DNA of 64,000 bases from Hydrolagus affinis (Eukaryota). The stretch is from positions 1 to 64,000 of the forward strand of contig JAAILG010000781.1 of assembly GCA_012026655.1 (NCBI GenBank), in the 5' to 3' direction. Both the position numbers and the translations under genes were made by a program. Shown piece after piece: positions 142 through 28,544 of this stretch. Below the pieces are notes generated by a model. The model made no database searches and had not been told where the DNA came from. It was given only the letters and a program-made list of their open reading frames with translations. How positions within the stretch are numbered: the first letter of the stretch is position 1; every line of letters starts with the position of its first letter.

Positions 142-257
142 AGCAAAATTACATTCAGAAAGTCATTTTAAGTTCTCATAAGTAAACACAGGGAGCCACT
201 GACTGTCTTGACATCTGTATTGATTATCTTGTCTGATGTCTCTTCCCTTGCCTTCAG

Positions 258-342
258 ATGAAATGAATGACCATCAGAATACACTGTCATACGTTCTGAT
301 TAACCCTCCTCCCAACACACAGCTGGAGCTGAACGACATAGT
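258..342 (+). CDS. KCNT1: KCNT1 (Slack/Slo2.2 Na+-activated K+ channel) penultimate coding exon
   Basis: ttcag acceptor at 256-257 and gtacgt donor at 343; encodes [29 protein letters not shown], matching the KCNT1 C-terminal region ([12 protein letters not shown] fits KCNT1 better than KCNT2). Confidence 0.93.
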
Positions 343-571
343 GTACGTATGGTGCTGTCTGCAGCAAAGAAAAACATCTTGGCCCCTTCCAGGCCCACAT
401 CTCACCCACCAAAACAAAGTCACTTTACAGCAGACAGCATCAGTCATTTATTATTTCAGTAAAACACTTACTCTGTATAAAGAAAGTTGTATTTTAAATA
501 TAAAAACACATACACATTGAATGGTTCCTGACATCTGTGGTGACTAACTAGTGTTGGCCTGTTTCAAACAG

Positions 572-4879: not shown

Positions 4880-4885
4880 TTTATT
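4880..4885 (-). promoter_or_regulatory. Candidate poly(A) signal of LRR-A (second candidate at 4494-4499)
   Basis: tttatt on + strand = AATAAA on - strand, ~550 nt after the LRR-A stop at 5435. Confidence 0.45.
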
Positions 4886-5434: not shown

Positions 5435-7239
5435 TCATTTCACTAGAGTTTGACAATCAAATACCTGCTTCAGGTTACAGAGAGCGTTAATCACAGCCAA
5501 CTCACTGTCCAGCGAGAGTTCCCGCTGGCTGGGTTTGGGGGGTGAACCCCGACTCGCTGAGCCAGGGAGGGCCGCCCCCGAGAGTGTTATCTCGGGGCCG
5601 GTTGGTAGAGACCCAACCGTAGACTCCAACTCAACCCGACCACCAACCCATCGCCGCCGCCGTCGCTTCCAACGCAGGGATGGCGAGATACCTCCACTTC
5701 TCCCCCCACCTCTCCCCCCGCTTCCCTCTCCCCCCCCTGGCTCATTGCCCCCCACCCTGCCGACGCCCGTCTCCTCCGCCTTAACGCCCAGCGCCGCCCG
5801 GTTAATGGAAACGAAGACAGACTCCCACCTTCTGCTCGAACAGCCTGGGACCAGATGAACGAACCTTTCTCCCGGCGCGGGGTCCTCCCCGGGAAGGTCT
5901 ACCCCAAGCTGGGATAGAGTTGGAGAGCAGGCGTCACCTCTAGCCCAGGGCCGGTGGTGTCTGGCGGGGTCTGTCCGCTTGGGAGAGAGGCTCTGGGTTG
6001 AACAGACGCCCCGAACCACCTCCTCCATCTCCCCACCACCTCCCAACTCACCTTCCGCGTCCAAAACGCGGGGTTCCTGCTTCTCCAAAGCCTCCAGGTT
6101 GAGAGAGTCCCCCGGGCAGAGTCTCTGGGCGGCAGCAGCCGGTGGGAAGTTGGTGCAGAGCGGCTGAGATGTCTCCCCTCCAGGGCTGAGAGCCAAAGAG
6201 CCCGGGTCCAACCTGGAGACTCCCACCTCCTCTCCAGAGCCGCCCTCTGGTGTGAGTCCCACCCTCGCCTGGCTCCCACCTTTTGTACAGAGAGGGAGGG
6301 GGGGCAGAGGGCTGACTGGACCCACGTGAAACTCCCTGATTGCTCTGTGATGGGGTGGACTCAGTTTACCTGTGACCCACGTGGACGCGTGGGAATGTGT
6401 CCCATCGCCCCCCACACACTGGTCCAATGTGCAGCCAGGGTTACACAAGGAGCCTATTAACTCGTTGGCCTTGTATTCTGACCCTTGGCCCTCGCTCTGG
6501 TTGTCCTCCTGGCCCCAGCCCTCCCCAATCCCGGCCTTGCCCCCTTGCCGCAAAGCCTCCGAGCCCCGCTCGCTGGCGATTCCTCCTCCGCCGACCGGGG
6601 TCGAGGCCCCTTGCGCGCGGGAACCCGGAGGAAACGCAACGCGACTGACGCAGAGAGAAGTGGACCCCTGCGGGCGGCCTCCCCCTGGACTTGACTCCCG
6701 GGGGTCGGCGTTGCCGGGCCGCCCGCCTTCTCCACACTCGGGGCCGTCGCGCGTAGGCACCTCCTCGTCCGTGTCCGGTGACGGCGACGGCGGCTCCCCT
6801 TCTTCCTCCCGCTGGCTTTCCAACCTCAGAGGTGGAGGGGTTAACTGCTCTCCCGTCACGGAGTGTGCGTTCCCCATCGGAATCGATCCCTCGGGATGTC
6901 CTCCTGACGTGACAGGCGCTGGACAAATGTTCGAGTCGAGCTCCAATTCCACGCCAGCCGTACCTCCATCAGACGCCTTCACAGTCACCTTAACCCCGCC
7001 AGCCTCCCCGGCTCGGCTCGGCCATGACGCCACGGAGTCGGTGTTGGGAGCCGAGCTCACGTAGACCCGTCTCGAGGCGCCGGGGAGGTTCTGCTCCTCC
7101 GGGTCTCTTCCCCCCGCGCGATGGCAACCGGGAGAGACGGGAGCCTCTATCGCTGGAAGGACATCGGCCGTCTGGCTCGCTGATTGACTTCTTCGGTTTC
7201 CGGACGCGGGCCCCCACATTGCAGAGCTGCAAGTGGCAC
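5435..7239 (-). CDS. LRR-A exon 6 (terminal): ~600 aa Gly/Pro/Ser/Glu-rich, probably disordered distal cytoplasmic tail
   Basis: 606-codon ORF; phase-1 acceptor cttacag|GT at 7240-7241; GC/CpG-rich against an AT-rich background; frame-compatible with the phase-1 donor at 8337. Confidence 0.65.
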
Positions 7240-7471
7240 CTGTAAGATTTGTCACGCACAGAAAATCAAAGCCAACGTTTGATCAAAATCAAACCAAACT
7301 ACGGGCATTGGTGGCAGCTTAAATTCAACAGGCAAAGCTTTCTAAAAACACACCACAGTTCAGCTTTCTGAACAGCTTGTTCTTTGAACGAACGAGAGAC
7401 TTCTTTCCTTTGAGGTATTATTTTCCTCTCTTCCCGTAATCGTTCACTCTACTGTATTCACTTCTCCCTCC

Positions 7472-7933
7472 GGAGTCCTGTGGCTCAGTGGTCAGAGCAC
7501 ACGACTGACAAGCGAGAGACCGCGGTTCAGTTCCAGGCACGGTGAAACCTTGGGAAACCTTCTTTACCCCACACGCCTAATAATAATCCCTGAATTAAAA
7601 AAAACACACAAGCGTGAGACCTGTGTTTCGAATCCAGGCAGGTCAGGGTGAAACCGTGGGCAAGTTTCCTTACTCCACACACACACACACACACGCACGC
7701 TCGCGCCTAATAATAATCTGCCCCCCCACCCCCCCAAAAAAAAAAACCAATAATAAAATTGGTCATTTCAATCCACGACTGTTTATGGGACGCTGCTGTG
7801 CGCAATTCACCCACAAAATATGCACTCAATTCACTTTACAGGATATTCTGAGAAGCGCTCACTCTGAGATGCCTCAACGCAGTGATCGGGCATTATATTA
7901 AGTGCAATTACAGTATTATTATTATTATTATTA
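7472..7933 (+). mobile_element. Dimeric/nested SINE (two tRNA-like heads, one body, (TTA)n tail) in LRR-A intron 5
   Basis: Head at 7472 (ggagtcctgtggctcagtggtcagagcac), second partial head at ~7610 (caagcgtgagacctgtgttcgaatcc), core ggacgctgctgtgcgcaatt, tail tattattattatt to ~7933. Confidence 0.85.
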
Positions 7934-8337
7934 TCAAGGGAGAACTCAAAATAGGGAGTTGTGAGTCTCGGTTGATGTTCACACTCTAATCCAGGAGTGC
8001 TGAGGCCCAGCTATCAAATCAACCCAGCACTAAGATGAGGCATTTACCACACTCTTAAACAGTGTCTATGTTATTTCTTTTCTTCCTTTGCCCTTGCGAC
8101 AGCCTCTTTAAGAGGTTCCCTCTCAGCCTCTCGTTGTTTTTAAGGGGCTCCTTATCAGGTGGCTTGTTTGGAAGGGTTTGAACCGGGGTTCTGGCCTCGG
8201 AGTAAGATTTTCCGTCCCTCCCTCCGTGCGGCGCTCGCCTCACGACAGCACCGGGCCTGCACTCAGCACACAACACCGCGAATGGTACCGTGAGGTCCTT
8301 GCCCCGCTTCCTGCCGCAAAACCCAAACCCAAACTAC

Positions 8338-9186
8338 CTTCTTTGGTGAATCCCTCCACCCGATGTTCACGTCGCCGCCGGCGAGACCGTCTGTCGCGCC
8401 TTGCAGTGCTGCGGTGAGCATCTTGAACGCGCCCTTCCCTCGCCACCCGTCCGCAGTCTGTTTGTTCCAACGTAAGTCCGATGTAGCTCGCCGCTTGTGA
8501 AGCGAGTCCTGCCTCACAGAACCGGGTCGGTTCATCTCCGCCGGCTCCTCGCCCTTCCCGCGCCGCAGAACGTGTGGGGACCGTGCGGGGTCGTTGTCTT
8601 CTAGTGCCACTCGTGACTGGTTCGCTGGCAGCGGGACCGATGAGGTTGCGCTCTCCTCCCCCGTGCAACTCACCGGTAGCTTCAGCTGCCGGGGAGCGGC
8701 CGATCAAATCGATGGCATTCCCAGATGCGCTCGTTGATGGACGCTCGTTTTCCTCGGTCTCACTCAGCTCTTCGTGCGTGGCGTCAGCCACAGGCTCCCC
8801 TAACGCCTCAGTGTCCGCGTCCTCGAGTGGCCTCACGGCTTTCACTTGGTTTTGCTTCAAGAGCGCAGTTTGGAATCCCCGTTTGCAGCTTCTGGCCTCG
8901 TTGTGGAGCTGGAAGACTTGATTGAGATCCGTTGGATCTCCAGCACCCAGTGAGTTACTAGGAGTTTGACTATAAGTCCCTGTAAACGCCTGCTCCGAGC
9001 TGATTGAAAACTGGATAGTGTTTTGGGCCAAGTTATCCGCGAGGGACGGCAGGTTCGGTTTCTCGTGGACATTCAGGTTACTGTTGATAAAAGAACCGTG
9101 CTCTAAGTTGTGCTGTGATATTTTGAGACATATTGGGTGCTTCAAGGATTGCACCACTTGTTCCCTCTCCCAATGTTTCCAGATGC
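8338..9186 (-). CDS. LRR-A exon 5: proximal/middle cytoplasmic tail (read-through of the donor gives a stop at 8240)
   Basis: Acceptor ctcacag|GC ATC TGG at 9187-9188; lies in the 320-aa ORF; phase-1 donor GAAG|GTAGTT at 8337; 849 nt, frame-preserving. Confidence 0.7.
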
Positions 9187-9365
9187 CTGTGAGCGAATAC
9201 AAAAATAAACTTTTCGAATGAATAAAATTGGCCTGCGTGTGTTTTTTTTAAAAAAAATGGTTTGCACAACTAACACCCGAAAAATATTAATTTCTTACCA
9301 CGCACAAATATGTTAAAGCATTTGTGGAAAATGTACGTTCTGAAACACTTTTATTTCTCCAAGGA

Positions 9366-9626
9366 GAAAACCTTGGGCAAATTTACTTACTCCACACGTC
9401 TAACAATAATCCCTCCAAAAAAACACACAAGATACTGTACTGTGATAATATTGGTCATTTCATTCCACGACTGTTTGTAGGGGACGCTGCTGTGCGCAAT
9501 TAGCTGCCGCGTTTCGCCCACAAATACAGTCAATTCACTTTACGATATATCCTATGAAGCGCTTTGAGACGTCGATAAGATGTGAAAAGCGCTATATCAA
9601 AATACAAGCATGATTATTATTGTTAT
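9366..9626 (+). mobile_element. 5'-truncated SINE in LRR-A intron 4, with its tail abutting the exon 4 donor
   Basis: aaaccttgggcaa...gggacgctgctgtgcgcaattagctgccgcgtttcgcccacaaat...gcgctttgagacgtc...aaagcgctatatcaaa...gattattatt. Confidence 0.88.
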
Positions 9627-9630
9627 TTAC

Positions 9631-10074
9631 CTGGTTCGGTATTTCTCAGGCCTCCGTCACGTCCGGAGCGTGGATCGCCGTTGGACGCTAGATTGTTGTG
9701 TACGCGCGTGACATTCGCAGCAAGGAAACCAGGAGCCGTCTTGCAGAGTCGAATTTGCTCCCGGTTCTCGAGGACTCTTGCGCCTCTCTCTGCAGCACTC
9801 GCGCTCAGGTTTTCTTTGGCTAGATTGAAGGATTTCTCTCTGCCCGCCCTGTTGCCACAGCTCTGCGGCTCATTGTTGAACAGGTAAGGAGGGATCATGG
9901 GCACAGTCGGTGCTTTGCTGGCATCCAATTCCTTCTGCGCGCCGCCGTGCCTTATCGCTCGCGATGGCTTTGTCACACCGCCGTGTGTTGCAAGACTCGA
10001 AAACAAAACTTCTTTCAAGTCTTTCCTACAGCAGCAGAAGGCGAAACAAACAGCAAATGCCAAGCAAAATCCAC
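9631..10074 (-). CDS. LRR-A exon 4: second half of TM helix, CCC juxtamembrane cluster and start of the cytoplasmic tail
   Basis: Acceptor ttccag|GT GGA TTT at 10075-10076, donor CCAG|GTAAAT at 9630; encodes (G)GFCLAFAVCFAFCCCRKDLKEV...RNTEP; 444 nt, phase 1-1. Confidence 0.82.
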
Positions 10075-10317
10075 CTGGAAGAGACCGATTAATCAAAAGA
10101 AAAGATTCTGAAATAAGAATTGATCGCGCATCTTCAAACTATTCACGTTTCACAAAAACATTTCAATTCGATTTTTGGCTTTGTGCTCGATCCTCCTACT
10201 TGATGAAACCAGTGACACCCAACCCCAACCCCCAGTGGGTATATCAATAAGTAATTGAAGCAATATAAGAAGTGATCAAAGCGGGACTGTGCGGTCAGAG
10301 CCTGAGTAGAGGGACGT

Positions 10318-10430
10318 AATAATAATAATCCTTTCATTTGATAAATTGCGCCTTATCATGTTGTTGAGACGTCTCAAAGCGCTTTATACAATATACTGTA
10401 CTGCAAAGTGGATTGACTGTGTACTTTGTG
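10318..10430 (-). mobile_element. SINE 3' fragment
   Basis: aataataataatcctttcatttgata...gacgtctcaaagcgcttt = reverse complement of the family tail. Confidence 0.75.
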
Positions 10431-10570
10431 GTCGATAGTTATAAGGTCTCACTTTTAATAAGAACCGTAAAGCGTGGAACAAGGTGAGAGTGGATTAAAA
10501 AAAAACTATCGGCCAGTGCAATTTACCTCTTTATGAACTTGTGCGCAAAATATTGACATTTGCATCTCAC

Positions 10571-11443
10571 CTATAAATCCATAAACCGCGCTGAGGGCTG
10601 GAGTGCTGTCTGGAGGCAGGGTGGTGGGAGCTGGGGTGAAGCCCGGACCCGTGGAGGGTGGAGCGGAGGCTTGGCAGAGATTGGGACTGAGATCCAGGAT
10701 GGGTTGGCTTCGTGCGCTCTCTGGATTTCGACAGAACAAGCTTCCTGGATTCTCCAAGGCCTTGCTCAGGGATTGCAGCGTGGCGAGGAGTTGGCAGCTG
10801 CACATCCAGGGGTTGCTCTGTAGTCTCAGTCTCAGCACGTGCTCTGGGACGCCAGCTAATGTGGTCAGTCGGTTTCCACTCAGATGCAGGTCTTTCAGAC
10901 TCGTCAGAGGAGCGAAAGCATCCGGGTCAATGAACAGTAGCTGGTTGTTGGACAAATCCAGGATACTCAGGGAGCCGAGGCCAGAGAACGTGCCTATGGA
11001 TATGTATTGGATCCGATTGGAGGTTGCATTCAGGTGGGTCAGCCGTTGAACCCTCTCGAACAACCCCAGCGACAGATAGAAGATCAGGTTCCGGTCTACG
11101 TCCAATTTACGAAGCGAAACCAGGTCTGAGAACCACGTGGGCTTCAGCGTGTTCAAGGCATTGTTGCTCAACACCAACTTGGTCAGGTTTCCGAGCCCAC
11201 TCAGAGCCCCCTCTGCGATGTCGCAGCTCCGCAATCGGCTGTGAGTCATTTCCAGCTGATCCAGCACGCTGCCTCTTCTTGTGGTTGAGCTGAAGGCGTC
11301 GTTCTCAAGGTCCAGCTTTTGAAATTGGCTCATCTCCACATATTCAAGCTTTGAGAAGTTTGAGAAGGCCCCTGCCTCCAGGGTGGTGGGTTCCCCATTT
11401 CGAAGCAATATCACTTGGACCGTCCTGGGTACAGCCGTCAGAA
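10571..11443 (-). CDS. LRR-A exon 3: ~8-9 LRRs, LRRCT (NPWMCSC...C...C), Pro/Thr stalk, first half of TM
   Basis: Acceptor gtgctag|TT CTG ACG at 11444-11445, donor ATAG|GTGAGA at 10570; repeats such as LTKLVLSNNAL, LRKLDVDRNLI, LSILDLSNNQL, LKDLHLSGNRL; 873 nt, phase 1-1. Confidence 0.92.
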
Positions 11444-11539
11444 CTAGCACACAGAGCTGAGAGTTCATTTCCACAAATTCAGAGCATGAAATATACATTT
11501 TTTCCAAATCTCATCCCTAGGCAATCTGCAGACCCTGGT

Positions 11540-11700
11540 CTCTCCCACACCAATATTATCAGCCCCACCTACACTCGCCTCCACTGGCTCTCCATCTCAC
11601 AGCGGATCAAGTTCAAGACCTTCGTTCTCTCCTTCAAATCCCTCCCAACCCTACCTCCTCTGAAATCTCTTTCAACACCACTGAACCAAGCTGGCTCCCT
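11540..11700 (+). mobile_element. L2-type LINE ORF2 C-terminal fragment
   Basis: Translates to ...RLHWLSISQRIKFKTFVLSFKSL, the LHWLPxxxRIxFK motif typical of L2-clade ORF2 ends. Confidence 0.7.
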
Positions 11701-11958
11701 TCACTCGTGGAAGACTCCCTTCTCCTTTGAAACAGACCAGCGGAATCGTAGGTTCGATCCTGCCTTCTGTAGTGAGTCAGTTGAACTGAGACAACAGTAA
11801 AGCAGTGGTATGATTGGCTTCTTTGCCCCTGGGCTACATTGGGAAATACATGAGTTTTGTTTTAATATCCATCTTAAGTTCTGACAATGCAAATAGTATC
11901 CGCTTCTTCACCTCTCTCCCCACCTCCGTCCTGTACCACATTCAAGAGTAAGCTACGC

Positions 11959-12037
11959 TTATGATGTGACCTGCATTTGATGTAGAACTATCTACGCCAA
12001 GAAGATAGTTCTACATCAAATGCAGGTCACATCATAA
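11959..12037. repeat. Perfect 35-bp inverted repeat with a 9-nt loop, in LRR-A intron 2
   Basis: 11959-11993 ttatgatgtgacctgcatttgatgtagaactatct is the exact reverse complement of 12003-12037. Confidence 0.95.
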
Positions 12038-12147
12038 CCAAACGAGCCAAGCTGACGTTTAGCCCATCACTGCTGAGCAACAGCCTGTAAGAGGAAAGGA
12101 ATCGGGTTAAACTGAATGTCCTAATCTTACGCTGTCGGGTGACTTAC

Positions 12148-12273
12148 CTTCCTTCAGCGAGGGCACAGATTGGCAATTAGCCAGATTTCCCTGACAAGTA
12201 CAGTGACAAGTACAAGGACATTCCTGTGTCCGCACACAACACAGTACAGCGCTCAGCGTAGACAGGGAGAGAT
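12148..12273 (-). CDS. LRR-A exon 2: signal peptide and Cys-rich LRRNT cap
   Basis: Acceptor tttccacag|AT at 12274-12275, donor GAAG|GTAAGT at 12147; encodes (H)LSLSTLSAVLCCVRTQECPCTCHCTCQGNLANCQSVPSLKE; 126 nt, phase 1-1. Confidence 0.85.
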
Positions 12274-12344
12274 CTGTGGAAAGATGCACGGCGGTGTAAA
12301 GACCTCACTCTTTTAGTTCCGCGGCAACGATCGCCGACTTCACC

Positions 12345-12600
12345 ACATCCATTTCCACGGGATCAGGGGGTTTAACAACAACAGCAACAACAAAATGATA
12401 CTTGACCAGCGCCCGTCGTGTCAGGAGGACCTCCCAAGGCGCTGGACAGACATTGTTTCCGACCCGAGCTGGGGACGGGGAGGGTGAAGGGAAAGGGGAT
12501 GATTTGGAGCCACCGATAGGACCATCAAAGAGGAGGGTCTTGAGGTGGGACTTGACGGAGGCCGGGGAGGGCGAGGCGGAGTGACTGCGGGCATTAATCA
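12345..12600 (-). mobile_element. L2-type LINE 3' end
   Basis: caacaacagcaacaacaaaatgatact...tcaggaggacctcccaaggcgctggaca...ggggagggtgaagggaaagggg; similar to 20295-20520 and 45805-46100. Confidence 0.65.
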
Positions 12601-12924
12601 CTGAATTCTCACCAGGAGAGTGAGGGTGCTGTGTGTGTAAGTTTGCCTACCTCTACTGTAGGCCTGGGAGATCACCGGGGAGAAGTGAGATGGTTTAAGC
12701 AATAGATGAACAAAATGTTAGTTAGCCACCGAGCCTCTGTTGGAGCACACAGTGATATTTCTAAGTAGATTTTTGTAAGCGTGAAATCTCCGTGCTGCTG
12801 CCCACTGCCCCCCCACCCCCCAAGCCAAACTATTTACAGAGCAGGGTTCCCCCAAGTCAGAGTGACCCACTTGCAAATAGAATCCCCACTCACTCCCATT
12901 TCTAAATTAAGAAATTCATCGTTT

Positions 12925-13262
12925 GGCATTTCGCCCACAAAGTACACAGTTAGGGCACTTTACAGTAATATCCTGTGAAGCATTTTGAGACATCGCAACG
13001 AATTGCTATAATAATAATAATCATCCTTGAATTTGATAGAGTGCTTTTTCACGTCTTCTAGACGTCTCAAAGCGCTTCACAGAATGTACTGTAAAGTGAA
13101 TTGACGGTATATTTGTGGGCGAAATGCGGCAGCCAATTGCGCACAGCAGTGTCCCCCACAAACAGTCGTGGATCGAAATGACCAATTTTATTATCGTGGG
13201 TTTTCTTTTGGATGGATTATTATTAGGCGCGTGGAGTACGTATTAAATGCAAGGATTATTAA
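12925..13262. mobile_element. Plus-strand SINE 3' part interrupted by a minus-strand SINE (~13010-13238)
   Basis: The + copy runs ...ctgtgaagcattttgagacatc...gctata [insert] ttaaatgcaaggattatt; the insert is the reverse complement of the same family. Confidence 0.8.
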
Positions 13263-13319
13263 TATAATAACACTGACCTCCCCCCATATACACTACCACC
13301 AATTCTGTTTAACACTCAC

Positions 13320-13326
13320 GCTTCAT
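13320..13326 (-). CDS. LRR-A exon 1 coding part (ATG AAG C, 7 nt)
   Basis: caatATGAAGC|GTGAGT; phase 1, joins exon 2 to give MKHLSLSTLSAVLCC...; mirrors the LRR-B first exon. Confidence 0.72.
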
Positions 13327-13999
13327 ATTGAGCAAATGTTTTCAAGATGTAAGTAGTCTCTCTTCCCGGTTTCTCCCTCGTCGATTCGACGACAGGCTCA
13401 TCGCGTTGGCTGCAGAGCAAATTCCCGTTCGATGAGAGATCAGGTGAATTTATACTCCGAGAGAACTCCCTGGTTCGTTTGCTCCTGTTAATGATCAATG
13501 TATATTTTATGGATACCCAGAGCCTGTCCCTGCCGCATGGGAGAGCCGGGCATGTCGAGAGCTGCACCAAATCGTGGAAAGAGTTACTGAGACGCAACTT
13601 GCATTTGGTTAACGAGTTAATAACTCAACCGAAAATAACAAGGCGCCTGCCTACTGCCAGTGGGTCTCAGATATGGGTGGAACTGCGATGCTCTTGAAAT
13701 CAGACAACTTCACTAAGTTAAAAATCAGTTCAAAATGTTCCTCACTCCATAACCCACAGAAAACTCCCAGGCCAGAAAAAAAATAGTTTGGTGGGAGAGG
13801 ACTTATGACAGCCCTAAGCAAATTGCTATTATATACTGTACACTGCTGGTAGGAAACAAAACAAGATCACTTGAGAGTGATTTTTTTCTGGTCCTTTCCT
13901 CCATTCCTGCAACATCACTCCCCTCTGTTCCTACCTTCACCCAAAGCAATGGACTCCCCCCACCCCCCCCACTTACACCTTTGTCATTGACAAACTTGA

Positions 14000-14250
14000 C
14001 CTCTGATGTCCTTGCCACCCTGGCCCACTGTCAATGTCCGTGGACTTATTAGCCTGCATGCCACCACAGACTGGCCCCACCCTCCTCTACCCCTTGCATC
14101 CCACCATCTTTCAACGAGTCTCCAGCCACTTTGGCTCCTTTCTCTGCGGGACCTCCTTCTCGCTCCGCTTTTAAATCCCTTCTATAAAAAAATTGGACCG
14201 TCTCACTGCGTCCTTGGTCATCTCCCACTGCCCTGTCTCCCAGCAGCCTG
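14000..14250 (+). mobile_element. Degraded LINE (L2-like) ORF2 fragment
   Basis: C-rich sequence ...gccaccacagactggccccaccctcctctacccc...tcccactgccc, resembling the pre-RT region of L2 elements; frameshifted. Confidence 0.4.
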
Positions 14251-14498
14251 AGCTGGTGATTTCTCTCTCTCTCTCTCTCTGTGACTCTGTGAAGTGTTTC
14301 GAAATGATTAATTATTGGAAAGGTGCAAGTTGCTCTACAGCTGAGCAGAATTACCTTAAATCCCTGGAGTGCGTTTCCCTGGACACTTAGGATCCCTGCA
14401 TCCTTCATAGTTGAGCTTTTGTTCCAGCCCATTTGGTCTGGATTCTCTCCCAGAAAATCAAAGGGTTGGTTTCTCAACCTACCCAGGCCTTGCTAACA

Positions 14499-14800
14499 AA
14501 GTACTGCAGCTCAGTGGATAGAGCACTCGCCTTACAAGCGAGAGACTTTGGTTCAATTCCCGGCAGGGCGAAACCTTGTTTCGCTACTCCACACGCCTCA
14601 TAATAATAATCCCTCAAAAAGAAATTGGTCACTTCAATCCATGTCTGTTTGTGGGGACGCTGCTGTGCGCAATTGGCTGCCACATTTCACCCACAAATAT
14701 ACTGTACAATCAATTCACTTTACAGTGTATTCTGTGAAGCGCTTTGAGACGTCTAGAAGACGTGAAAAGCGCTGTATCAAATTCATGGATTATTATTATT
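14499..14800 (+). mobile_element. Near full-length SINE between LRR-B and LRR-A
   Basis: gcagctcagtggatagagcactcgccttacaagcgagag...ggttcaattcc...gggacgctgctgtgcgcaattggctgcc...gtgaagcgctttgagacgtctagaagacgtgaaaagcgctgtatcaaa...gattattattatt. Confidence 0.92.
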
Positions 14801-14914
14801 AAAGTTTCAACTGTGTTGCACAGAAGGACAAAAGAAACACATGAAGAGAGGGATGGAGGGAGGAGCTGTAGTAGGAATAGAAAATGACAACCTCCTTTGA
14901 AGCCGTTGAAATCA

Positions 14915-14920
14915 TTTATT
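14915..14920 (-). promoter_or_regulatory. Candidate poly(A) signal of LRR-B
   Basis: tttatt = AATAAA on - strand, ~470 nt after the stop at 15389. Confidence 0.5.
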
Positions 14921-15269
14921 AAAAGATACACACAAATTTACGATTGACATAACCAACACAGTATAGCGAGGCTTGATTTCATCGTCGACTGATCGCTGAA
15001 AACAAAACCCACCCTCCCCGACCACCAAATCATTTCTAATTAATGTTTTCCAAATGCGCTCAGCAGGAAGCTTTGGTCATCTGTTCTGCCCTCTAACTCT
15101 GAAGTTAATGTGTGCAGGAGAGAGGCGGAGATGAGATGAGGTTGAGATGAATTGGGTCGGAGGGCACACTTCATCCGAATCACCCTTTAAACTGTCAAAC
15201 TGCCGTTGGGATCAGGATAGGTGATGCGCTCATATTTTTAAAAAAAATCATCTACTTTGGAGTCTGAAT

Positions 15270-15391
15270 TATTCCATCCACTCGTCCACAAATGTACAGT
15301 CAATTCACTTTACAGTATATTCTGTGAAGCTCTTTGAGACGTCTAGAAGACGTGAAAAATGCTACATCAAATGCAAGGATTATTATTATTA
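15270..15391 (+). mobile_element. SINE 3' fragment whose (TTA)n tail overlaps the LRR-B stop codon
   Basis: ccacaaatgtacagtcaattcactttacag...gtgaaaaatgctacatcaaatgcaaggattattattatta. Confidence 0.85.
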
Positions 15392-16626
15392 TAAACCGTG
15401 CGTTTGAACCTTGTGCTGAAGGTTACTATGCGTCTGTTTCCATCTATCCCGGGTCCAGCGCCCCTGATTTTCCACGACTTCATGCAGAAGGTTGATGTAG
15501 CCGTATTCCCTGCGGTGTATGGGCTGGTCTTCGGTTGGGAAGCTTGGGTTAAAAGCCCCTTCGCAGGCCGGCGTCGCTTGTGAAATGGGGTCGGGTTTAG
15601 CCCCTGGAGGAGTAACGGCTGGAATGCCGTCTTGCCCTTTGCTCATCCCCTCCGTTGTCCCCTCCAAAGGCGCAGCCGAATGACGGGTTTCCCAAACGTC
15701 ATCTGCCTCCAAACTGCTCCGGTCGCTTTGCAGCCCCTTGGCGAGTCCTCGGCTGTCGCCTGTCACTCTCCTTCCCCCGACGAGTCCAGCCTTGCCTCCG
15801 CCCGGCCCGATCTTCAGAGCCGCCTCGTTCGTGTGGTCAAGTGCGTTCTGCGAGCGCTTGCCCGGTCTTCCAACCTCATCGCCATCCAGAGTATTCATTA
15901 CACTCGCTCTTGCACCGTATAAGGCTTCATCACCACCTGGTTTGAACGATTGGGTCTCTAGCGGACTTCTCGATGAACCGTCCTGACTTACGATCAATGG
16001 AGTATCGTTAGTGTTTCCATTGGGGTGCGGGCTGTTGTTAGTGTTGCTCATGCCACCGTTTGTGCTCTTAGACAAAGGTAGGATAGTCCCGATTGGTTTG
16101 CCGTCTTCATTTCTTCCCTGTCTCGCTGGGTTTGCTGTTCCCTGGAAAGTGTGACTGTCAAACGGTTCCGAATCGCTCCACGATTTGATGTCCAGGACAA
16201 GAGCCTGTTTTTCGCAGACTCTGCCTGGGTATCTTCCCAGTTCCACCTCAGCCGTTATATTTGAGATGCTGTCTCTATGTCTTCCTCCCTCCTGAAGCAG
16301 TCGGCTTGTGGTTGGAGGTGCCTTGACTGGACTAGCTGATGCATGACCCATGGTCTCTTCTGGAAAGGGGACTTTGGATGTGTCTCCTGAGGCGAAGTTT
16401 GCATGTCCTTTGACCCCCTGATGGACATCGTTCATTTGCTTGTCATCACTTTCCAGCACAGACACTGAAATATTTGCCTCTGTCCGTCGATTCTCATTTG
16501 GATTTTCAATCGCGCTGCCCTCCCGCGGGGATGTTTCCTTGTTCTCCTTTTCCGGTATCACTGGGTTCGTATCGTGTTTCCGTTTTATCAGCAGAAGAAT
16601 CAGGAACAGGAAGAATAAGACGAGTG
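15389..16626 (-). CDS. LRR-B exon 5 (terminal): second half of TM, stop-transfer KRK, ~400-aa cytoplasmic tail
   Basis: Acceptor ccccgcag|CA CTC GTC at 16627-16628; (A)LVLFFLFLILLLIKRKHDTNPV continues into the 390-aa ORF; TAA at 15389-15391. Confidence 0.87.
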
Positions 16627-16774
16627 CTGCGGGGGAGAGGAACAGGACACGTGAAAATTACTGAATGGACTTCAACGAACGACAACTTGAATTGATGTAT
16701 AGCGTCCCAGAGAGCTTGACAGTGCCGGAACAGAAAGCACTCGGACTCAACTCGCTTGCTTGAGTAACAAAAAC

Positions 16775-17050
16775 CCTTGCGTTTGATATAACGCTTTTCA
16801 TGACTTCCAGACGTCTCAAAGCGCTTCACAGATTATACTGTAAAGTGAATTGACTGCATGTTTGCGGGCGAAACGCGGCAGCCAATTGCACACAGCAGCG
16901 TCCCCACAAACGGGCGTGGATTGAAATGACCAATTTTATTATTGTATTTTTCCGGGAGGGATTATTATCAGGCGTGTGTGTGGAGTAAGGAAACTTGCCC
17001 ACAATTTGGCCCTGATCTGCCTGTATTCGAGCGCAGGTCTCACGCTTGTC
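16775..17050 (-). mobile_element. SINE in LRR-B intron 4
   Basis: Reverse complement of the family: ccttgcgtttgatata...gtctcaaagcgcttcacag...gcagccaattgcacacagcagcgtcccc...ggtctcacgcttgt. Confidence 0.88.
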
Positions 17051-17106
17051 TAAGAAAAAAAATACAAATAAAAAGACAACTCAATATCAAGCGAAGTGCG
17101 TCTTAC

Positions 17107-17322
17107 CTAACAGCACCAGGACTGTGAGTAACTGTGTCTGACTGGACAGTGTTGATGCAGGGGGTTGTTCATAAGGCCCGGTTGTGCTTCCAGTCACAGT
17201 TGTGGTTCCAGTCACAGGACAGTCAAAATCAGACACGTTCCAAAGAGGAATTCCTTTCAAATGTGCTGGATCCAGGCAGACAACAGCTGACCGTTTCTCC
17301 ACTACAGATTTATTCACCAAAT
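17107..17322 (-). CDS. LRR-B exon 4: second half of LRRCT, Thr-rich stalk, first half of TM
   Basis: Acceptor ttttccag|AT TTG at 17323-17324, donor TTAG|GTAAGA at 17106; (D)LVNKSVVEKRSAVVCLDPAHLKGIPLWNVSDFDCPVTGTTTVTGSTTG...QLLTVLVLL; 216 nt, phase 1-1. Confidence 0.88.
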
Positions 17323-17365
17323 CTGGAAAATGTATCGTTGGAAAACATGAATAAAATAATACTAG

Positions 17366-17646
17366 TAATAATACTTGCATTCGAGATAGCGCTTTTCACG
17401 TCTTCTTGACGTCTCAAAGCGCTTCACAGAATATAATATGTATTGTTTTTAAGCGCACAGAAGTGTCCCCACAAACAGTCGTGGATTGAAATGACCAATT
17501 TATTATTGTGTTACTTTTGAGGGATAATTATTTGGCGCGTGTATGTGTGGAATAAAAAACTTGCCCTAGGTTTTGCCCTGACCTGCCTGGATTTGAGACA
17601 CAGGTCTCACGCTTGTAAGGCTCTAACCACTGAGCTACAGGACTCC
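17366..17646 (-). mobile_element. Full-length SINE in LRR-B intron 3
   Basis: From taataatacttgcatt... to ctctaaccactgagctacaggactcc (reverse complement of the tRNA-like head). Confidence 0.9.
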
Positions 17647-17841
17647 ACATTAAATTATCGGTTGCTGTCCTCTGGCTCTTTGTGTATTCTATTCCACTCA
17701 ACAATTATCCAAATGAATCGACATTATGGATGCGTGTGTTGTGCACAACAAAAATACAACAGGTTTCTTTATCCCGTCGTTCCTTGAGCTTTGGGAATTT
17801 CACTCAAAATCAAAAGGTATGTAGGTGAAACAATAACTCAC

Positions 17842-18381
17842 CTCTCAGAAAGGATGCGAATTCCCTGAGCTGACAGGAACAGTTCCAGCGGTTCCTAGTG
17901 AGATCAATTTCTCTCGCCTGCACACCTTCAAAAGCCCTGGGGCTCAAGAAAGACAAATGATTGACCGAAAAATTAAGCGTGGACAGATGGGGGTTACTCT
18001 TGAAACTCCCACTAGCTACCCTCACAATCTTGTTCCAAGAAAGATCTAGCGTTTTTAAACTGGAGAACAAGGATAGAGTGTCCTCGCTGATCAGATGGAT
18101 GTTATTCCTGGACAGGCTGAGGCTGGCAAGACTGGCGGGGTTGGAAAACCAGGCAGCATCGATCGCGTCCAGTTGGTTGTTGTCCAAGTCCATTGAGGCC
18201 AGGTTGAGGAAAGCACTTAAAGCTCCTGGTTCAATGCTCCTCACTTGGCTGCTGGCTATGGTCAGGTTGGTGACAGACACCAGCTTGGAACTGTTGAAAA
18301 TCGTACGGTCGATGGTCCCAATCTCAAAGGAATTGATCCCAAAGAACGAGATGACGCTCACGTCGGAGGAATAGAATGAGG
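17842..18381 (-). CDS. LRR-B exon 3: ~6-7 LRRs and first half of LRRCT (NRWNCSC)
   Basis: Acceptor ttttcag|CC TCA at 18382-18383, donor AGAG|GTGAGT at 17841; repeats LASMDLDNNQL, LASLSLSRNNI, LKTLDLSWNKI, LSTLNFSVNHL; 540 nt, phase 1-1. Confidence 0.92.
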
Positions 18382-19142
18382 CTGAAAATAGACAAGTTTC
18401 GAGGATGTTTACTATTCAAGTGGTGTGACACAGGAGTGTGAATGAGAAAGCAGAGTGACTAGTTTTATGCTCTCTGAAACTACTTGATTCTGGAGTGCAG
18501 TTACTATACTAGCTCCAATAGTCATTGCTCCACTTTCTCCCTCCCCCACCCTTCAAAGAAAGTTGTACATAGAAACTTACATATTTCATAGAAATCACGG
18601 CATTTACAGCTCGTAAATTACAGCATAGGAGGCCATTCCACCTCTCAATGACTGGATCAAGTTTCTATAAACCCAATTCCATTCTCCTTGGGATTCACTT
18701 GACAACACTGCTCTACTATTTCTTTCCCAATCATCCCATTCTTTGATTGTGCGAATATTCAAATGAATCGGACATTAATAATTTTATTGTTGGCCATGAA
18801 ATGTTTCTGGCGGGGATTATCTGCAGTGTTTAAAAACATTGATTTAATTTTTTAGTTTAAATCAAATATACTTTGTAAAAGCGCTTCAAGATATTTGTTC
18901 GTGTGACAGGTGCTTTATAATAAGTTATTATTATATACAAGTAGTATCATACTTGTCACCGAATATTTCTCCAGTTCCCTTTTAAATGCTGTTGCGTTTG
19001 AATTAGAATTACAAGACCTTGCAAGTGTAAAGATAGAAATGTAATGAAGGGGATGAAGAGCGTTTTTTTGGCCCTCAAGTAATTAGACTTGCTAAGGAAC
19101 CTTCAGAAAACGATTCATTGTAAGACGCATCAACTTACTTAC

Positions 19143-19262
19143 AATTGGGTATAGCAGTACAGAAGATATACACAATGTTTTCTCCTCTCTGTTTCAAGCA
19201 TGGTTCGTCAGTCAGACACCTCGAGAAACACAAGCTCCAAATGAAAGCCACTGACAGGAATG
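19143..19262 (-). CDS. LRR-B exon 2: signal peptide and reduced N-cap (not in the ORF track)
   Basis: Acceptor ttttgcag|CA TTC at 19263-19264, donor AATT|GTAAGT at 19142; (S)FLSVAFIWSLCFSRCLTDEPCLKQRGENIVYIFCTAIPN; 120 nt, phase 1-1. Confidence 0.82.
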
Positions 19263-19659
19263 CTGCAAAATATCACACAAGTTCGTGATGGAAAGCGTCA
19301 ATATAATCATCGATTATATTCATCGAAGACTTCGCCAGGCCAGGGTTCCATCTCACATGAAAACATTACAAACTAATTGTATAATATTCCTTGCATTTGA
19401 TTTATATTATTACATTAGGATTACAAACTAGAGCATCTTTGGTCTGTAATCCAATATTTTCCTCGAGCTGGGTTCCGGGTCGAAAAAGAATTTGCAATAA
19501 AATGTTCCTCCAAACTAAAGGAATCCCCTACAATGTGTGTGAAAATAATTCCTGGGCTCGACAATGATTTTGACGTTTAATGGGACTTCTTAATAATTCC
19601 CCCAAAACCACATCACGGATGCTTGAAGTTAAAAAGAAACAAGTAAGAAAAAATGACAT

Positions 19660-19737
19660 TCAAAGAGCCGGCACAGATTAGATGGGCCGAATGGCCTCCT
19701 TTTGTGCCGTAAAATTCTATGAATCTATGAATCTATT
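19660..19737 (+). mobile_element. CR1-type LINE 3' tail
   Basis: gcacagattagatgggccgaatggcctccttttgtgccgtaaaattctatgaatctatgaatcta: CR1 terminal motif with (ATTCTATG)-like repeats. Confidence 0.8.
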
Positions 19738-19911
19738 ACATCAGGAATCAAGATGTCATGAGGTAGTCAGTCTCATTCACATCAGTAAATCCTGTTCCAG
19801 TATATTCTGTGAAACGCTTTGAGATGTCAATAAGATGTGGAAAGCGCTATATCAAATGCAAGGATTATTATTATCATCATCCATATGTTACAGAGGGAAA
19901 GTTTTACTCAC

Positions 19912-19918
19912 ACTTCAT
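19912..19918 (-). CDS. LRR-B exon 1 coding part (ATG AAG T, 7 nt)
   Basis: gaaaATGAAGT|GTGAGT; phase 1, joins exon 2 to give MKSFLSVAFIWSLCFS... Confidence 0.75.
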
Positions 19919-20294
19919 TTTCCTCAGTCTTTACGCTGATTGTAGCAGGATAAGAGTTCTGCCGTTTGATGGGAGGTGAATTCTCTGTCTTTTGAGTCTC
20001 AACTAAATGAAGGACAGTGAATTCGGCGTTGACTTTTCGTTTAATTGTCATTAGACATGTTGAGACCTGAACCGTTTAATCGATGCGCTTCGAAACTTTA
20101 TGACTTCGGTCCTGCAAATAATTGGTAACATATCACCAGGGACAACAGAACTGAAGGCACTTATCAAGGTGACCCTGTATTGTAAACTCAAACATTGATG
20201 TCGGGGTTAAGGGTCTACTTATGGAATCCGTTTAGACAGCACCATCACGCCCTAAGGAAACTTTATCAATCAGAACTTGTATAGCGCGTTCATG

Positions 20295-28241: not shown

Positions 28242-28544
28242 TCATTTTGCTGCCGTTTGCTTCTTTGGCACTCCGGTGCGCTTTGCTTGCCACAGGTGAT
28301 TGTGAATGGTGAGAGCGTCCACGCTGACCGACATGGTTTTGGAAGGTATCAGGTTAAACTGCTTCCTGTCCGAACTGTATTTGTAAATCTTGTCAATCAT
28401 CTTCTTGGTAATGCTTTTTGGTCCCGTCCCAGTTAACTTCTGGATCTCCTCAGCCTCCGGGAAATAAGCATAAACTGCTCGGAACTGGCAGCCAGCGTCA
28501 CGGAACAGGATGATGTAATGATGAGCTTCGCACCTCTCAAGCTC
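28242..28544 (-). CDS. CAMSAP1: CAMSAP1 last exon, C-terminal part of the CKK microtubule minus-end-binding domain
   Basis: ttccag|GAG; ELERCEAHHYIILFRDAGCQFRAVY...GTGPKSITKKMIDKIYKYSSDRKQF...DALTIHNHLWQ...K* (TGA 28242-28244). Confidence 0.96.
   Translation of the reverse strand, partial: ELERCEAHHYIILFRDAGCQFRAVYAYFPEAEEIQKLTGTGPKSITKKMIDKIYKYSSDRKQFNLIPSKTMSVSVDALTIHNHLWQAKRTGVPKKQTAAK

What the first reader, a model, noticed from the sequence alone, without database searches (positions are those of the whole stretch)
5435..19918. Tandem pair of unassigned LRR single-pass receptors with very long cytoplasmic tails, between KCNT1 and CAMSAP1
Seen in sequence: two complete minus-strand gene models with canonical GT-AG junctions and intact frames. 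LRR-B: 19918-19912, 19262-19143, 18381-17842, 17322-17107, 16626-15389 = 2121 nt, 706 aa. LRR-A: 13326-13320, 12273-12148, 11443-10571, 10074-9631, 9186-8338, 7239-5435 = 4104 nt, 1367 aa. Both have signal peptide, LRRNT, LRRs, LRRCT, Pro/Thr stalk, one TM, and a ~400 aa (B) or ~1000 aa (A) low-complexity tail with no TIR, kinase or Ig domain. Established knowledge: KCNT1 and CAMSAP1 are convergent neighbours at human 9q34.3, and I know of no such LRR genes between them. Inference: an ancient receptor pair lost in mammals, or a lineage-specific insertion; possibly a pattern-recognition, adhesion or paired signalling system. The ORF track splits these genes into unrelated pieces, so automated annotation may miss them or label them generically.
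Basis: partly seen in the sequence, partly recalled or inferred. Interest (0 to 1): 0.85.

Follow-up and report, generated by a model that had tools for sequence, protein, structure and literature searches.

The report
Two unnamed ancient LRR receptor genes
Two neighbouring genes in what looks like a chimaera-type cartilaginous fish encode cell-surface leucine-rich-repeat proteins that belong to two old vertebrate gene families which nobody has named or studied and which seem to be missing from birds and mammals.

Summary
Both minus-strand models are mechanically sound (GT-AG, all introns phase 1, no internal stop; 706 and 1367 codons) and lie between KCNT1 and CAMSAP1. LRR-B is the orthologue of Callorhinchus LOC103183062 (80% identity in the LRR exon, exon borders match). 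It belongs to an unnamed family defined by a near-invariant C-terminal motif, found in 93 protein clusters from sharks, rays, ray-finned fishes, amphibians and reptiles. None of the 24 clusters with an organism name is a bird or mammal. LRR-A belongs to a second unnamed family (shark, sturgeon, turtles, squamates; full-length unfused models 887-1544 aa, same long tail). Four public gene models fuse a B-like to an A-like gene, so the tandem is ancient. A shared 7-nt first exon, an intron inside the membrane helix and a shared upstream element mark A and B as old paralogues. Weak points: the A5/A6 junction and both 7-nt exons have no read support, part of the A tail evolves neutrally, and function is untested. 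The most likely reading is type I surface receptors whose disordered tails carry short docking motifs. The nearest named look-alikes, LRRC53 and LRRC66, could not be tested. The same reader had noted the shared exon and the B motif before on this same stretch.

The parts
19912..19918 (-). LRR-B exon 1: 7 nt, ATGAAGT (Met-Lys + 1 nt), donor GTGAGT
   Evidence: pattern found only twice in the window. Many B-family and one A-family protein start with MK. No read support.
19143..19262 (-). LRR-B exon 2: rest of the signal peptide and the Cys-rich N-cap
   Evidence: 83% identical to Callorhinchus P0001 residues 1-30. Border matches.
17842..18381 (-). LRR-B exon 3: about 6 LRRs and the start of the C-cap (NRWNCSC at 17873-17893)
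   Evidence: Pfam LRR_8 1.5e-37. 79.9% identity over 179 aa to P0001..
17107..17322 (-). LRR-B exon 4: second half of the C-cap, Thr/Pro stalk (17132-17218), first half of the membrane helix (17108-17131)
   Evidence: (LRRCT 16.8 bits, below the cut-off).
15389..16626 (-). LRR-B exon 5: second half of the membrane helix (16586-16624), a disordered tail of about 395 aa, stop
   Evidence: 55.5% identity over 409 aa to P0001. AlphaFold2: 345 of 411 residues have pLDDT under 50; helices at 2-17, 371-385 and 392-408.
15428..15508 (-). B-family C-terminal motif (EYGYINLLHEVVENQGRWTRDRWKQTH)
   Evidence: Occurs once in the window. Profile search gave 94 hits, nearly all at the extreme C-terminus; the exceptions are the fused P0097 and the doubtful P0098. 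10 invariant positions in 50 sequences. Low-confidence helix-loop-helix.
19962..19982 (-). Upstream element shared with gene A, 44 nt before the B start codon
   Evidence: 2 matches in the window, 0 in shuffles. The pattern was derived from these two sites.
14915..14920 (-). AATAAA, candidate poly(A) signal of LRR-B
   Evidence: Read. Inference only.
13320..13326 (-). LRR-A exon 1: 7 nt, ATGAAGC, donor GTGAGT
   Evidence: Shark A-like P0260 starts with MK. No read support.
12148..12273 (-). LRR-A exon 2: signal peptide and Cys-rich N-cap (12173-12220)
   Evidence: 64% identity over 22 aa to P0260. The A2/A3 junction restores the conserved SL-x-E-V-L.
10571..11443 (-). LRR-A exon 3: about 9 LRRs, C-cap (10674-10814), Pro/Thr stalk (10596-10673), first half of the membrane helix (10572-10595)
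   Evidence: Pfam LRR_8 8.5e-33. 47% identity to shark P0260, 38% to turtle P0135 and 37.5% to sturgeon P0126, each over its whole length.
9631..10074 (-). LRR-A exon 4: second half of the membrane helix (10028-10072) and 130 aa of tail. A stop lies 8 nt after the donor if the exon is left unspliced.
   Evidence: The YGF-x-GG junction is conserved. Donor CAG|GTAAAT scores 9.1 bits. The turtle model P0097 reads through at the same place, while other turtle models splice on.
8338..9186 (-). LRR-A exon 5: 283 aa of disordered tail
   Evidence: 320-codon ORF against a shuffle maximum of 270. A close relative differs here only by in-frame gaps of 18 and 27 letters. Its start resembles the turtle/sturgeon LVKYFET exon start. 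Weak similarity to the shark tail, 5 of 300 shuffles as good.
5435..7239 (-). LRR-A exon 6: 601 aa of G/S/P/E-rich tail and the stop. The acceptor at 7239 is unverified.
   Evidence: ORF statistics. RNA run X3 covers 4900-6300. 31 substitutions in 5524-6124 show no codon bias.
5459..5503 (-). A-family C-terminal island (ELAVINALCNLKQVF)
   Evidence: Best tblastn hit of the sturgeon A-like tail in the whole window (5465-5587, E 0.004). Local alignment z = 5.9, 0 of 300 shuffles as good. Looser versions in turtles and squamates. No listed difference to the close relative in 5425-5523.
13425..13450 (-). Upstream element shared with gene B, 99 nt before the A start codon
4880..4885 (-). AATAAA, candidate poly(A) signal of LRR-A
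   Evidence: Read. X3 depth falls from 4.1 (4900-5099) to 0.1 (4700-4899).
254..349 (+). Flank: KCNT1 C-terminal coding exon
   Evidence: PDB 5u70 residues 1133-1164, E 1.3e-12.
28245..28619 (-). Flank: last coding exon of CAMSAP1 (CKK domain)
   Evidence: Pfam CAMSAP_CKK 6.8e-36.

Best explanation
These are two intact, tandemly duplicated genes for type I membrane proteins. Each protein has a signal peptide, a Cys-capped LRR ectodomain (about 6 repeats in B, about 9 in A), a Thr/Pro stalk, one membrane helix split by a phase-1 intron, and a long disordered cytoplasmic tail.

Each gene is the chimaera-lineage orthologue of a separate, unnamed jawed-vertebrate family, and the B-then-A tandem predates the split of cartilaginous and bony vertebrates.

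Shown here: gene structure, family membership, conservation pattern, predicted disorder.

Inferred mechanism:
- The ectodomain binds an extracellular partner.
- The tail is a flexible scaffold in which only a few short motifs are under constraint.
- In B, the constrained motif is the C-terminal helix-loop-helix (acidic stretch, Tyr-x-x-hydrophobic, LLHEVVEN, then a basic Trp-rich helix). It would dock a cytosolic partner or sorting adaptor, possibly under tyrosine phosphorylation.
- In A, the C-terminal ELAVIN-x-LC island would do the same for another partner.
- The shared upstream element suggests common regulation.
For: Gene models.

B orthology:
- P0001 matches the tail at 56% and the LRR exon at 80%, with matching exon borders.
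- The tree places window B with Callorhinchus (100/99), then Mobula (98/99).

B family:
- Motif profile against 1.84 billion representatives gave 94 hits, 84 at E <= 1e-10, nearly all at the extreme C-terminus; the exceptions are the fused P0097 and the doubtful P0098.
- Named members range from sharks to crocodilians.
- 10 positions are invariant in 50 sequences.

A family:
- A exon 3 is 47% identical to shark P0260 and 35-39% to 12 full-length reptile proteins of 1005-1482 aa with the same layout.
- The A clade has 100/100 support.
- C-terminal island.

Tandem: fused B-to-A models in Macrochelys, Naja, Eublepharis and Acipenser.

Paralogy:
- Identical 7-nt first exon plus donor.
- Shared upstream element.
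- Intron inside the membrane helix in both genes.

Other:
- Disorder and terminal helices.
- Every SINE copy lies outside the exons.
- In-frame gaps only in A5, and a silent last 29 codons of A6, against a close relative.
- Transcription of the A6 3' part.
Against: - No splice-junction read was seen for any intron.
- The strand of the X3 reads depends on a library chemistry I do not know.
- In A6 5524-6124, the 31 listed substitutions against a close relative fall 10/12/9 on codon positions, with 8 synonymous against 9.4 expected. That part shows no purifying selection.
- The A5 donor is weak (6.4 bits) and the A6 acceptor has a poor pyrimidine tract.
- A profile of 11 reptile A tails finds nothing in the window (best E 0.13).
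- Similarity of A4 and A5 to the shark tail is marginal (8 and 5 of 300 shuffles).
- No Callorhinchus A-like protein turned up.
- Window A sits on a long branch, and its pairing with the shark has only 86/73 support.
- The C-terminal helices are low-confidence (pLDDT 57).
- Nothing here tests surface location, ligand or partner.
Confidence: 0.8

Rival explanations
1. Gene A is shorter than modelled. It ends at the stop 8 nt after exon 4 (about 480 aa) or after an extended exon 5, and the 606-codon ORF at 5435-7255 is an untranslated or separately transcribed GC-rich region.
For: - Neutral substitution pattern in 5524-6124.
- Long ORFs are fairly easy in this T-poor sequence (shuffle maximum 492).
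- Weak A5 donor and A6 acceptor.
- No junction reads.
- One public turtle model (P0097) stops right after the exon 4 equivalent.
Against: - The end of A6 carries the island that also ends the sturgeon A-like protein (E 0.004 over the six-frame window; z 5.9, 0 of 300 shuffles). That island shows no listed change against the close relative, where about 5 are expected.
- Full-length reptile and shark A-likes all have 540-1100 aa tails.
- A5 has only in-frame gaps.
- The A6 frame has 0 internal stops against 7-16 in the other frames.
Confidence: 0.12
2. A and/or B are members, as old paralogues or even orthologues, of the named but uncharacterised LRRC53/LRRC66 group. They would then not be unassigned families.
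For: In the language-model feature search, LRRC53 and LRRC66 clusters rank 1 and 2 for the shark A-like and 2 and 4 for the Callorhinchus B-like, with scores 0.96-0.97. The layout is the same: LRR, one membrane helix, very long tail.
Against: - That search gives no alignment and also ranks SLITRK3 as high. The tool itself calls these results leads.
- NCBI names none of the roughly 60 A- or B-family records seen here LRRC53 or LRRC66.
- No sequence of either could be fetched, so nothing was aligned.
Confidence: 0.2
3. The two proteins are auxiliary subunits of the neighbouring Slo2-type channel KCNT1, in the way that the LRRC26 family serves BK channels.
For: Only adjacency to KCNT1 and a small single-pass LRR ectodomain in B. 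The role of the LRRC26 family is recalled, not from a call.
Against: - Adjacency rarely implies function in vertebrates.
- The tails are 395 and about 1010 aa, not short.
- No LRRC26-type chain is among the best 60 solved-structure matches of either LRR exon.
- Whether the pair lies next to KCNT1 in other species is unknown.
Confidence: 0.03
4. The pair is a lineage-specific insertion or a decaying pair of pseudogenes.
For: Neutral pattern in part of the A tail. Long branch of window A.
Against: - Orthologues of both genes exist across jawed vertebrates, with trees that follow the species tree.
- 2073 codons are without a stop.
- B is 80% identical to Callorhinchus in the ectodomain.
- The terminal motifs are conserved.
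Confidence: 0.03

Closest known systems
Callorhinchus milii LOC103183062 (XP_007898500.1) and the unnamed 'LLHEVVEN-x-GRWTR-x-RW' family (for example Oreochromis LOC102078663, Oncorhynchus LOC110525996, Alligator LOC106738249, and an Ambystoma 'uncharacterized protein')
   Same: LRR-B has the same exon borders, ectodomain, stalk, membrane helix, disordered tail and C-terminal motif. It is the orthologue.
   Different: - The Callorhinchus model lacks the signal peptide and the 7-nt exon.
- Bony-vertebrate members carry further tail motifs (RAKSA, PYL-S/T-IG, R-x-x-T/S-WPP) that the two chimaera sequences lack.
- The chimaera and shark members share a GKP-I/V-G-x-I-x-P-L island instead.
Unnamed A-like family: Stegostoma LOC125465272, Chelonia LOC119563853, Pelodiscus LOC102443492, Anolis LOC134293146, and the second half of Acipenser sinensis FKN15_062114
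   Same: Signal peptide, CxC-rich N-cap, about 9 LRRs, C-cap, YGF-x-GG membrane helix, a tail of 540-1100 aa in several exons, and a C-terminal E-L/V-x-V/A-I/L-S/T/N island.
   Different: Apart from the island and a possible exon-start motif, the tails are not alignable between classes. The window protein has the most G/S/P-rich tail.
LRRC53 and LRRC66 (named, functionally uncharacterised)
   Same: Single LRR cluster, one membrane helix, very long low-complexity tail. They are the nearest named clusters by language-model features. 16 papers in the library mention LRRC53, none in the title or abstract (listing only).
   Different: No alignment could be made. Their chromosomal locations in human, as I recall them, are not at KCNT1-CAMSAP1. 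NCBI names none of the A or B records after them.
LRRC19 / LRRC25
   Same: Small LRR ectodomain and single pass.
   Different: No match to any LRRC19-type membrane-region family in Pfam in 16 full-length A/B relatives. The tails are far longer.
Toll-like receptors, SLITRK, LRRTM, LRRC15, IGFALS
   Same: The LRR repeats give strong profile matches: IGFALS 1.2e-48, TLR13 1.4e-38, LRRC15 5.4e-35 for A exon 3, and likewise for B.
   Different: No TIR domain, one LRR cluster rather than two, and no PDZ-type end. The matches are to the generic repeat, not to a family.

Membership tests
Extracellular LRR type I membrane proteins | LRR repeats recognised by profiles | tested here: met
   LRR_8 1.5e-37 (B exon 3) and 8.5e-33 (A exon 3).
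Extracellular LRR type I membrane proteins | Cys-capped N- and C-flanks | tested here: met
   Cys clusters and N-x-W-x-C-x-C...C...C located. Pfam LRRCT is only 16.8 bits against a cut-off of 20.
Extracellular LRR type I membrane proteins | One membrane helix | tested here: met
   Hydrophobic runs across the B4/B5 and A3/A4 exon borders. Helix 2-17 of B exon 5 in the model. No dedicated membrane predictor was run.
Extracellular LRR type I membrane proteins | Cleavable signal peptide | tested here: inconclusive
   Hydrophobic N-termini follow the Met-Lys of the 7-nt exons and relatives start with MK. The exons have no read support and no predictor was run.
B family (unnamed; C-terminal motif family) | Motif LLHEVVEN-x-GRWTR-x-RW at the extreme C-terminus | tested here: met
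   It occurs once in the window, at the end of B.
B family (unnamed; C-terminal motif family) | Orthology by tree and exon borders | tested here: met
   100/99 with Callorhinchus, inside a 100/100 B clade. Borders of exons 2-5 match.
A family (unnamed; reptile/shark/sturgeon LOCs) | Ectodomain alignable end to end, and clade membership | tested here: met
   47% (shark) and 35-39% (reptiles, sturgeon) over about 290 aa. The A clade has 100/100 support.
A family (unnamed; reptile/shark/sturgeon LOCs) | C-terminal island | tested here: met
   Against sturgeon: E 0.004, z 5.9 with 0 of 300 shuffles. Looser in reptiles and absent from the shark model.
A family (unnamed; reptile/shark/sturgeon LOCs) | Long tail encoded by several exons | tested here: inconclusive
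   The model gives about 1010 aa. The A4 donor and the A5 start are supported by analogy. The A5/A6 junction is unverified.
LRRC19/LRRC25 | Family-specific membrane-region domain in Pfam (LRR19-TM; the name is recalled) | tested here: not met
   No such hit in 10 B-family and 6 A-family full-length proteins at E up to 0.1 and 1. The window exons split the helix, so their blank says little.
Toll-like receptors | Cytoplasmic TIR domain | tested here: not met
   No TIR in any tail exon or in 16 relatives.
SLITRK | Two LRR clusters, each capped | tested here: not met
   One cluster in each gene. The Atlas rank is a feature score only.
LRRC53 / LRRC66 | Sequence and exon-structure kinship with the human genes | not testable with these tools
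The only lead is.
BK-channel gamma subunits (LRRC26/38/52/55) | Short cytoplasmic tail, total about 300-340 aa (recalled) | tested here: not met
   The tails are 395 and about 1010 aa. None is among the best 60 solved-structure matches.

The most novel reading that the evidence does not exclude
A and B form a co-regulated receptor pair, kept side by side for more than 400 million years, that signals through partners recognising their two family-specific C-terminal motifs. The whole module was discarded in the bird and mammal lineages. The B motif would then be a new kind of docking helix for an equally unstudied cytosolic partner.
Probability: 0.15. Interest if true: 0.75.

Novelty: new member of a known kind. 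Interest (0 to 1): 0.5.

Why it matters
- **Two new families.** This adds two deep, apparently unnamed orthologue families to the vertebrate set of extracellular LRR receptors. Each has a sharply conserved terminal motif that gives a direct handle for partner screens.
- **Gene loss.** The families seem to be gene-loss cases in birds and mammals, which would explain why they were never studied. They can be studied in zebrafish, axolotl, lizards and sharks.
- **Annotation repair.** The work flags a repeated annotation failure: four fused models, truncated starts and wrong names. This can be repaired with the 7-nt first exon and the two motifs as landmarks.

Tried and rejected
Tried without result:
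- A profile of 11 reptile A tails against all six-frame segments of the window (best E 0.13).
- The B motif profile against solved structures (best E 1.6).
- ARAGORN on 5000-20500 (none).
- Rfam on the whole window (only a tRNA-like SINE head).
- Paper searches for six LOC identifiers (0 papers), for two or more of LRRC53/66/19/25 (10 papers, none relevant in the listing) and for LRRC53 (16 papers, none with it in title or abstract). I saw listings only. Supplementary tables, where LOC identifiers usually sit, are closed, so a mention there cannot be excluded.
- Read laying gave no usable splice joints because SINE copies in the introns filled the tables.

Rejected readings:
- Lineage-specific insertion: both families are spread across jawed vertebrates.
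- Toll-like receptor: no TIR domain.
- LRRC19/25 and SLITRK: see the membership rows.
- A6 as a repeat-derived ORF: the very high depth at 6700-7100 traces to a short GC-rich piece, whose only other copy in the window is 38 nt at 12402-12439.

Not possible:
- Alignment with LRRC53 or LRRC66, because no sequence was available.
- A search or fold of the whole spliced proteins.

Full report
**The observation**

All nine introns begin GT and end AG, all are phase 1, and no exon has an internal stop. The lengths are 2121 nt (706 codons) for B and 4104 nt (1367 codons) for A. Exons were translated one at a time.

- Pfam on the nine larger exon peptides finds only LRR families, on B exon 3 and A exon 3, plus a sub-threshold LRRCT on B exon 4. 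The tails are blank.
- Cys caps, Thr/Pro stalks, membrane segments that straddle an exon border in both genes, and tails with 74-77% disorder-promoting residues were mapped.
- The flanks are as stated. There is a KCNT1 C-terminal exon on the + strand at 254-349. CAMSAP1 lies on the - strand, with its CKK exon at 28245-28619 and its CC1 region in 32906-35506.
- KCNT1 and CAMSAP1 therefore converge, and both LRR genes lie on the CAMSAP1 strand.

**Gene B**

The tail exon finds Callorhinchus milii XP_007898500.1, an 'uncharacterized' protein of 683 aa. It is 56% identical over 96% of the tail and 80% identical in the LRR exon. That public model starts inside exon 2 and has no signal peptide.

Five further hits shared only the last 40 residues. 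I built a 63-position profile of that end and searched it against 1.84 billion cluster representatives.
- It found 94 proteins at E <= 0.001, 84 of them at E <= 1e-10. The motif is nearly always at the extreme C-terminus; the exceptions are the fused P0097 and the doubtful P0098.
- I looked up 30 by exact sequence. 24 of the 94 carry an organism name: 10 teleosts, a sturgeon, 3 amphibians, 4 squamates, a crocodilian cluster, a turtle, a shark, 2 rays and Callorhinchus.
- All are labelled uncharacterized, hypothetical or 'LRRCT domain-containing'. None is a bird or a mammal.
- Of the other 70, 69 are nearest by BLASTP to a fish (59), squamate (5), amphibian (3) or crocodilian (2) member. One (P0098, E 6e-4) matches nothing else and is probably spurious.
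- In a 50-sequence alignment ten motif positions are invariant.
- Pfam sees nothing but LRRs in ten full-length members, and the motif profile matches no solved structure.
- AlphaFold2 gives the last 60 residues two helices at low confidence (pLDDT 57). For the whole tail exon it gives a membrane helix, 345 of 411 residues under pLDDT 50, and the same two terminal helices.

**Gene A**

Its LRR exon matched the second half of a motif hit, Macrochelys KAM7144505.1 (P0097). That model runs from a B-like tail, cut inside the motif, straight into an A-like ectodomain.

Searching with that second half, and then with a profile in which eight reptile proteins and the five A exons are separate rows, gave a second family.
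- It contains twelve turtle and fourteen squamate records and one shark, Stegostoma LOC125465272. Most are 'uncharacterized'. Four are misnamed reticulon-4 receptor-like or IGSF10.
- Full-length members have a signal peptide, a CxC-rich cap, LRRs to about residue 320, a YGF-x-GG membrane helix and a tail of 540 to 1100 aa.
- A exon 3 aligns end to end with them: 47% to the shark, and 35-39% to reptiles and to the A-like half of a sturgeon model.
- The A2/A3 and A3/A4 junctions recreate residues conserved in the shark protein.
- Both searches scored only the 8000 candidates sharing most words, so absence from other classes is not shown. No Callorhinchus A-like protein appeared.
- Pfam again sees only LRRs.

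**The tail of A: the weakest part of the finding**

For:
- The A6 frame has no internal stop against 7-16 in the other frames. It is longer than in any of 500 shuffles, although the T-poor composition allows ORFs of up to 492 codons. A5 behaves likewise.
- The sturgeon A-like tail has its best match in the whole six-frame window exactly at the end of A6, in frame, C-terminus to C-terminus (E 0.004). A local alignment scores z = 5.9, with 0 of 300 shuffles as good. Turtles and squamates carry looser versions near their ends.
- A5 begins with a sequence resembling the LVKYFET motif that begins the corresponding exon in turtles and sturgeon.
- One turtle model stops by read-through just where the window would stop if the exon 4 donor were unused, while other turtle models splice on.
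- In the one reads call (window 4700-10699), run X1 proved to be DNA of a close relative, 2-5% diverged over exons and introns alike. In A5 it differs by gaps of 18 and 27 letters only, whereas the listed gaps in the introns are 1, 1, 1, 1 and 12, plus a 6-letter one just past the A5 donor. It shows no listed change in the last 29 codons of A6, where about 5 would be expected.
- RNA run X3, under another organism label, covers 4900-6300 at up to 27-fold on one strand. It falls off at an AATAAA at 4880-4885.

Against:
- The 31 listed substitutions in 5524-6124 fall 10/12/9 on codon positions, with 8 synonymous against 9.4 expected.
- No splice joint could be seen among the SINE-derived joints.
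- Which strand the X3 reads represent depends on a chemistry I do not know.
- Runs X2 and X4 show nothing outside repeats.
- The A5 donor (6.4 bits on my own rough matrix) and the A6 acceptor are weak, although 8338 is the only usable donor in the last 260 nt of the A5 ORF.
- Similarity of A4 and A5 to the shark tail is marginal, and a reptile-tail profile finds nothing.

My reading is a fast-evolving disordered tail with a constrained terminal motif. The exact A5/A6 junction remains open.

**A and B as an old pair**

- A tree of 28 ectodomains splits into an A clade and a B clade, each with 100/100 support. Inside each clade, cartilaginous fishes, sturgeon and tetrapods branch as the species do.
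- Four public models fuse a B-like gene to a following A-like gene: Macrochelys, Naja, Eublepharis and Acipenser sinensis. In Lerista and Candoia the two lie on contigs of the same recorded length, probably the same contig. The B-then-A order on one strand is therefore shared by a chimaera, a ray-finned fish and reptiles.
- The two window genes share the 7-nt first coding exon with an identical donor. The 13-nt string occurs only at these two places, and many relatives begin with Met-Lys.
- They share a phase-1 intron inside the membrane helix.
- They share an upstream element that occurs only before these two start codons (pattern derived from the two sites).
- Every copy of the window's tRNA-derived SINE lies outside the predicted exons.

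**Comparison with known families**

- The LRR exons match IGFALS, TLR13, TLR3, LRRC15, LGR4/5, LRIG1 and LRRTM in the solved-structure set. This reflects the repeat, not kinship.
- There is no TIR domain, no second LRR cluster and no LRRC19-type membrane domain.
- The language-model feature search ranks LRRC53, LRRC66 and SLITRK3 clusters highest for a shark A-like and the Callorhinchus B-like. That is a lead about shared layout. I could not fetch LRRC53 or LRRC66 to align them.
- The library holds 16 papers that mention LRRC53, none in title or abstract, and none that names six of the LOC identifiers (listings only; supplements closed).

**Verdict**

- The 'ancient pair' reading is supported and the 'insertion' reading is rejected.
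- Loss in mammals and birds is likely but rests on absence of hits.
- These are two new, unnamed families of an ordinary kind of protein, with no function known. The proposed mechanism (ligand-binding ectodomain, scaffold tail, terminal docking motifs) is inference.
- The two earlier notes of this scan on the same stretch, on the shared 7-nt exon and on the ordered Tyr/Trp motif at the end of B, agree with what I tested independently.

Noticed in passing
window 7450-7950, 9280-9620, 10280-10520, 13008-13242, 14500-14800, 15282-15391, 16782-17049, 17354-17616, 19798-19874, and others (2051-2309, 21394-21660, 35563-35685, 44746-44865, 52539-52856): A tRNA-derived SINE family (tRNA-like head at 14500-14571, Rfam tRNA 42.7 bits) litters the locus. 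It draws depths in the millions in a relative's DNA contigs and hundreds to thousands in poly(A) RNA runs. Every copy lies in a predicted intron or between genes.
   Followed up: partly
window 19962-19982 and 13425-13450 (- strand): A composite element, AATTCACCT, 3-8 nt, then CATCRAACGG, occurs only twice in 64 kb: 44 nt and 99 nt upstream of the two start codons. It is either a promoter or leader element kept since an ancient duplication, or a trace of gene conversion.
   Followed up: partly
window about 13335-13394 (- strand): A short upstream ORF of 19 codons lies in the putative leader of gene A and ends before the ATGAAG start.
   Followed up: no
window 15282-15391: The stop codon of gene B sits at the very edge of a SINE tail (TAATAATAA...). 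The window protein runs a few residues past the end of the Callorhinchus protein, so the insertion may have reshaped the extreme C-terminus.
   Followed up: no
P0097 (Macrochelys), P0153 (Naja), P0257 (Eublepharis), P0126 (Acipenser sinensis); P0148, P0258, P0150, P0140, P0127: Public annotation fuses the B-like and A-like genes in four species. It names A-like genes reticulon-4 receptor-like 1/2 or IGSF10, and a B-like fragment LRRC15-like. The sturgeon model also skips the membrane-helix exon of its A-like half.
   Followed up: partly
window about 6930 and 6889-6926: The close relative in run X1 has about 65-66 extra letters at 6930 inside A6. A short GC-rich piece nearby, whose only other copy in the window is at 12402-12439, attracts thousands of contigs and explains the depth spike at 6700-7100.
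   Followed up: partly
alignment A4 (B family), columns about 715, 1139, 1185-1190: Bony-vertebrate B-family tails share further short motifs (RAKSA, PYL-S/T-IG with a near-invariant Tyr, R-x-x-T/S-WPP) that the chimaera sequences lack. Chimaera, shark and ray tails share a GKP-I/V-G-x-I-x-P-L island instead.
   Followed up: no
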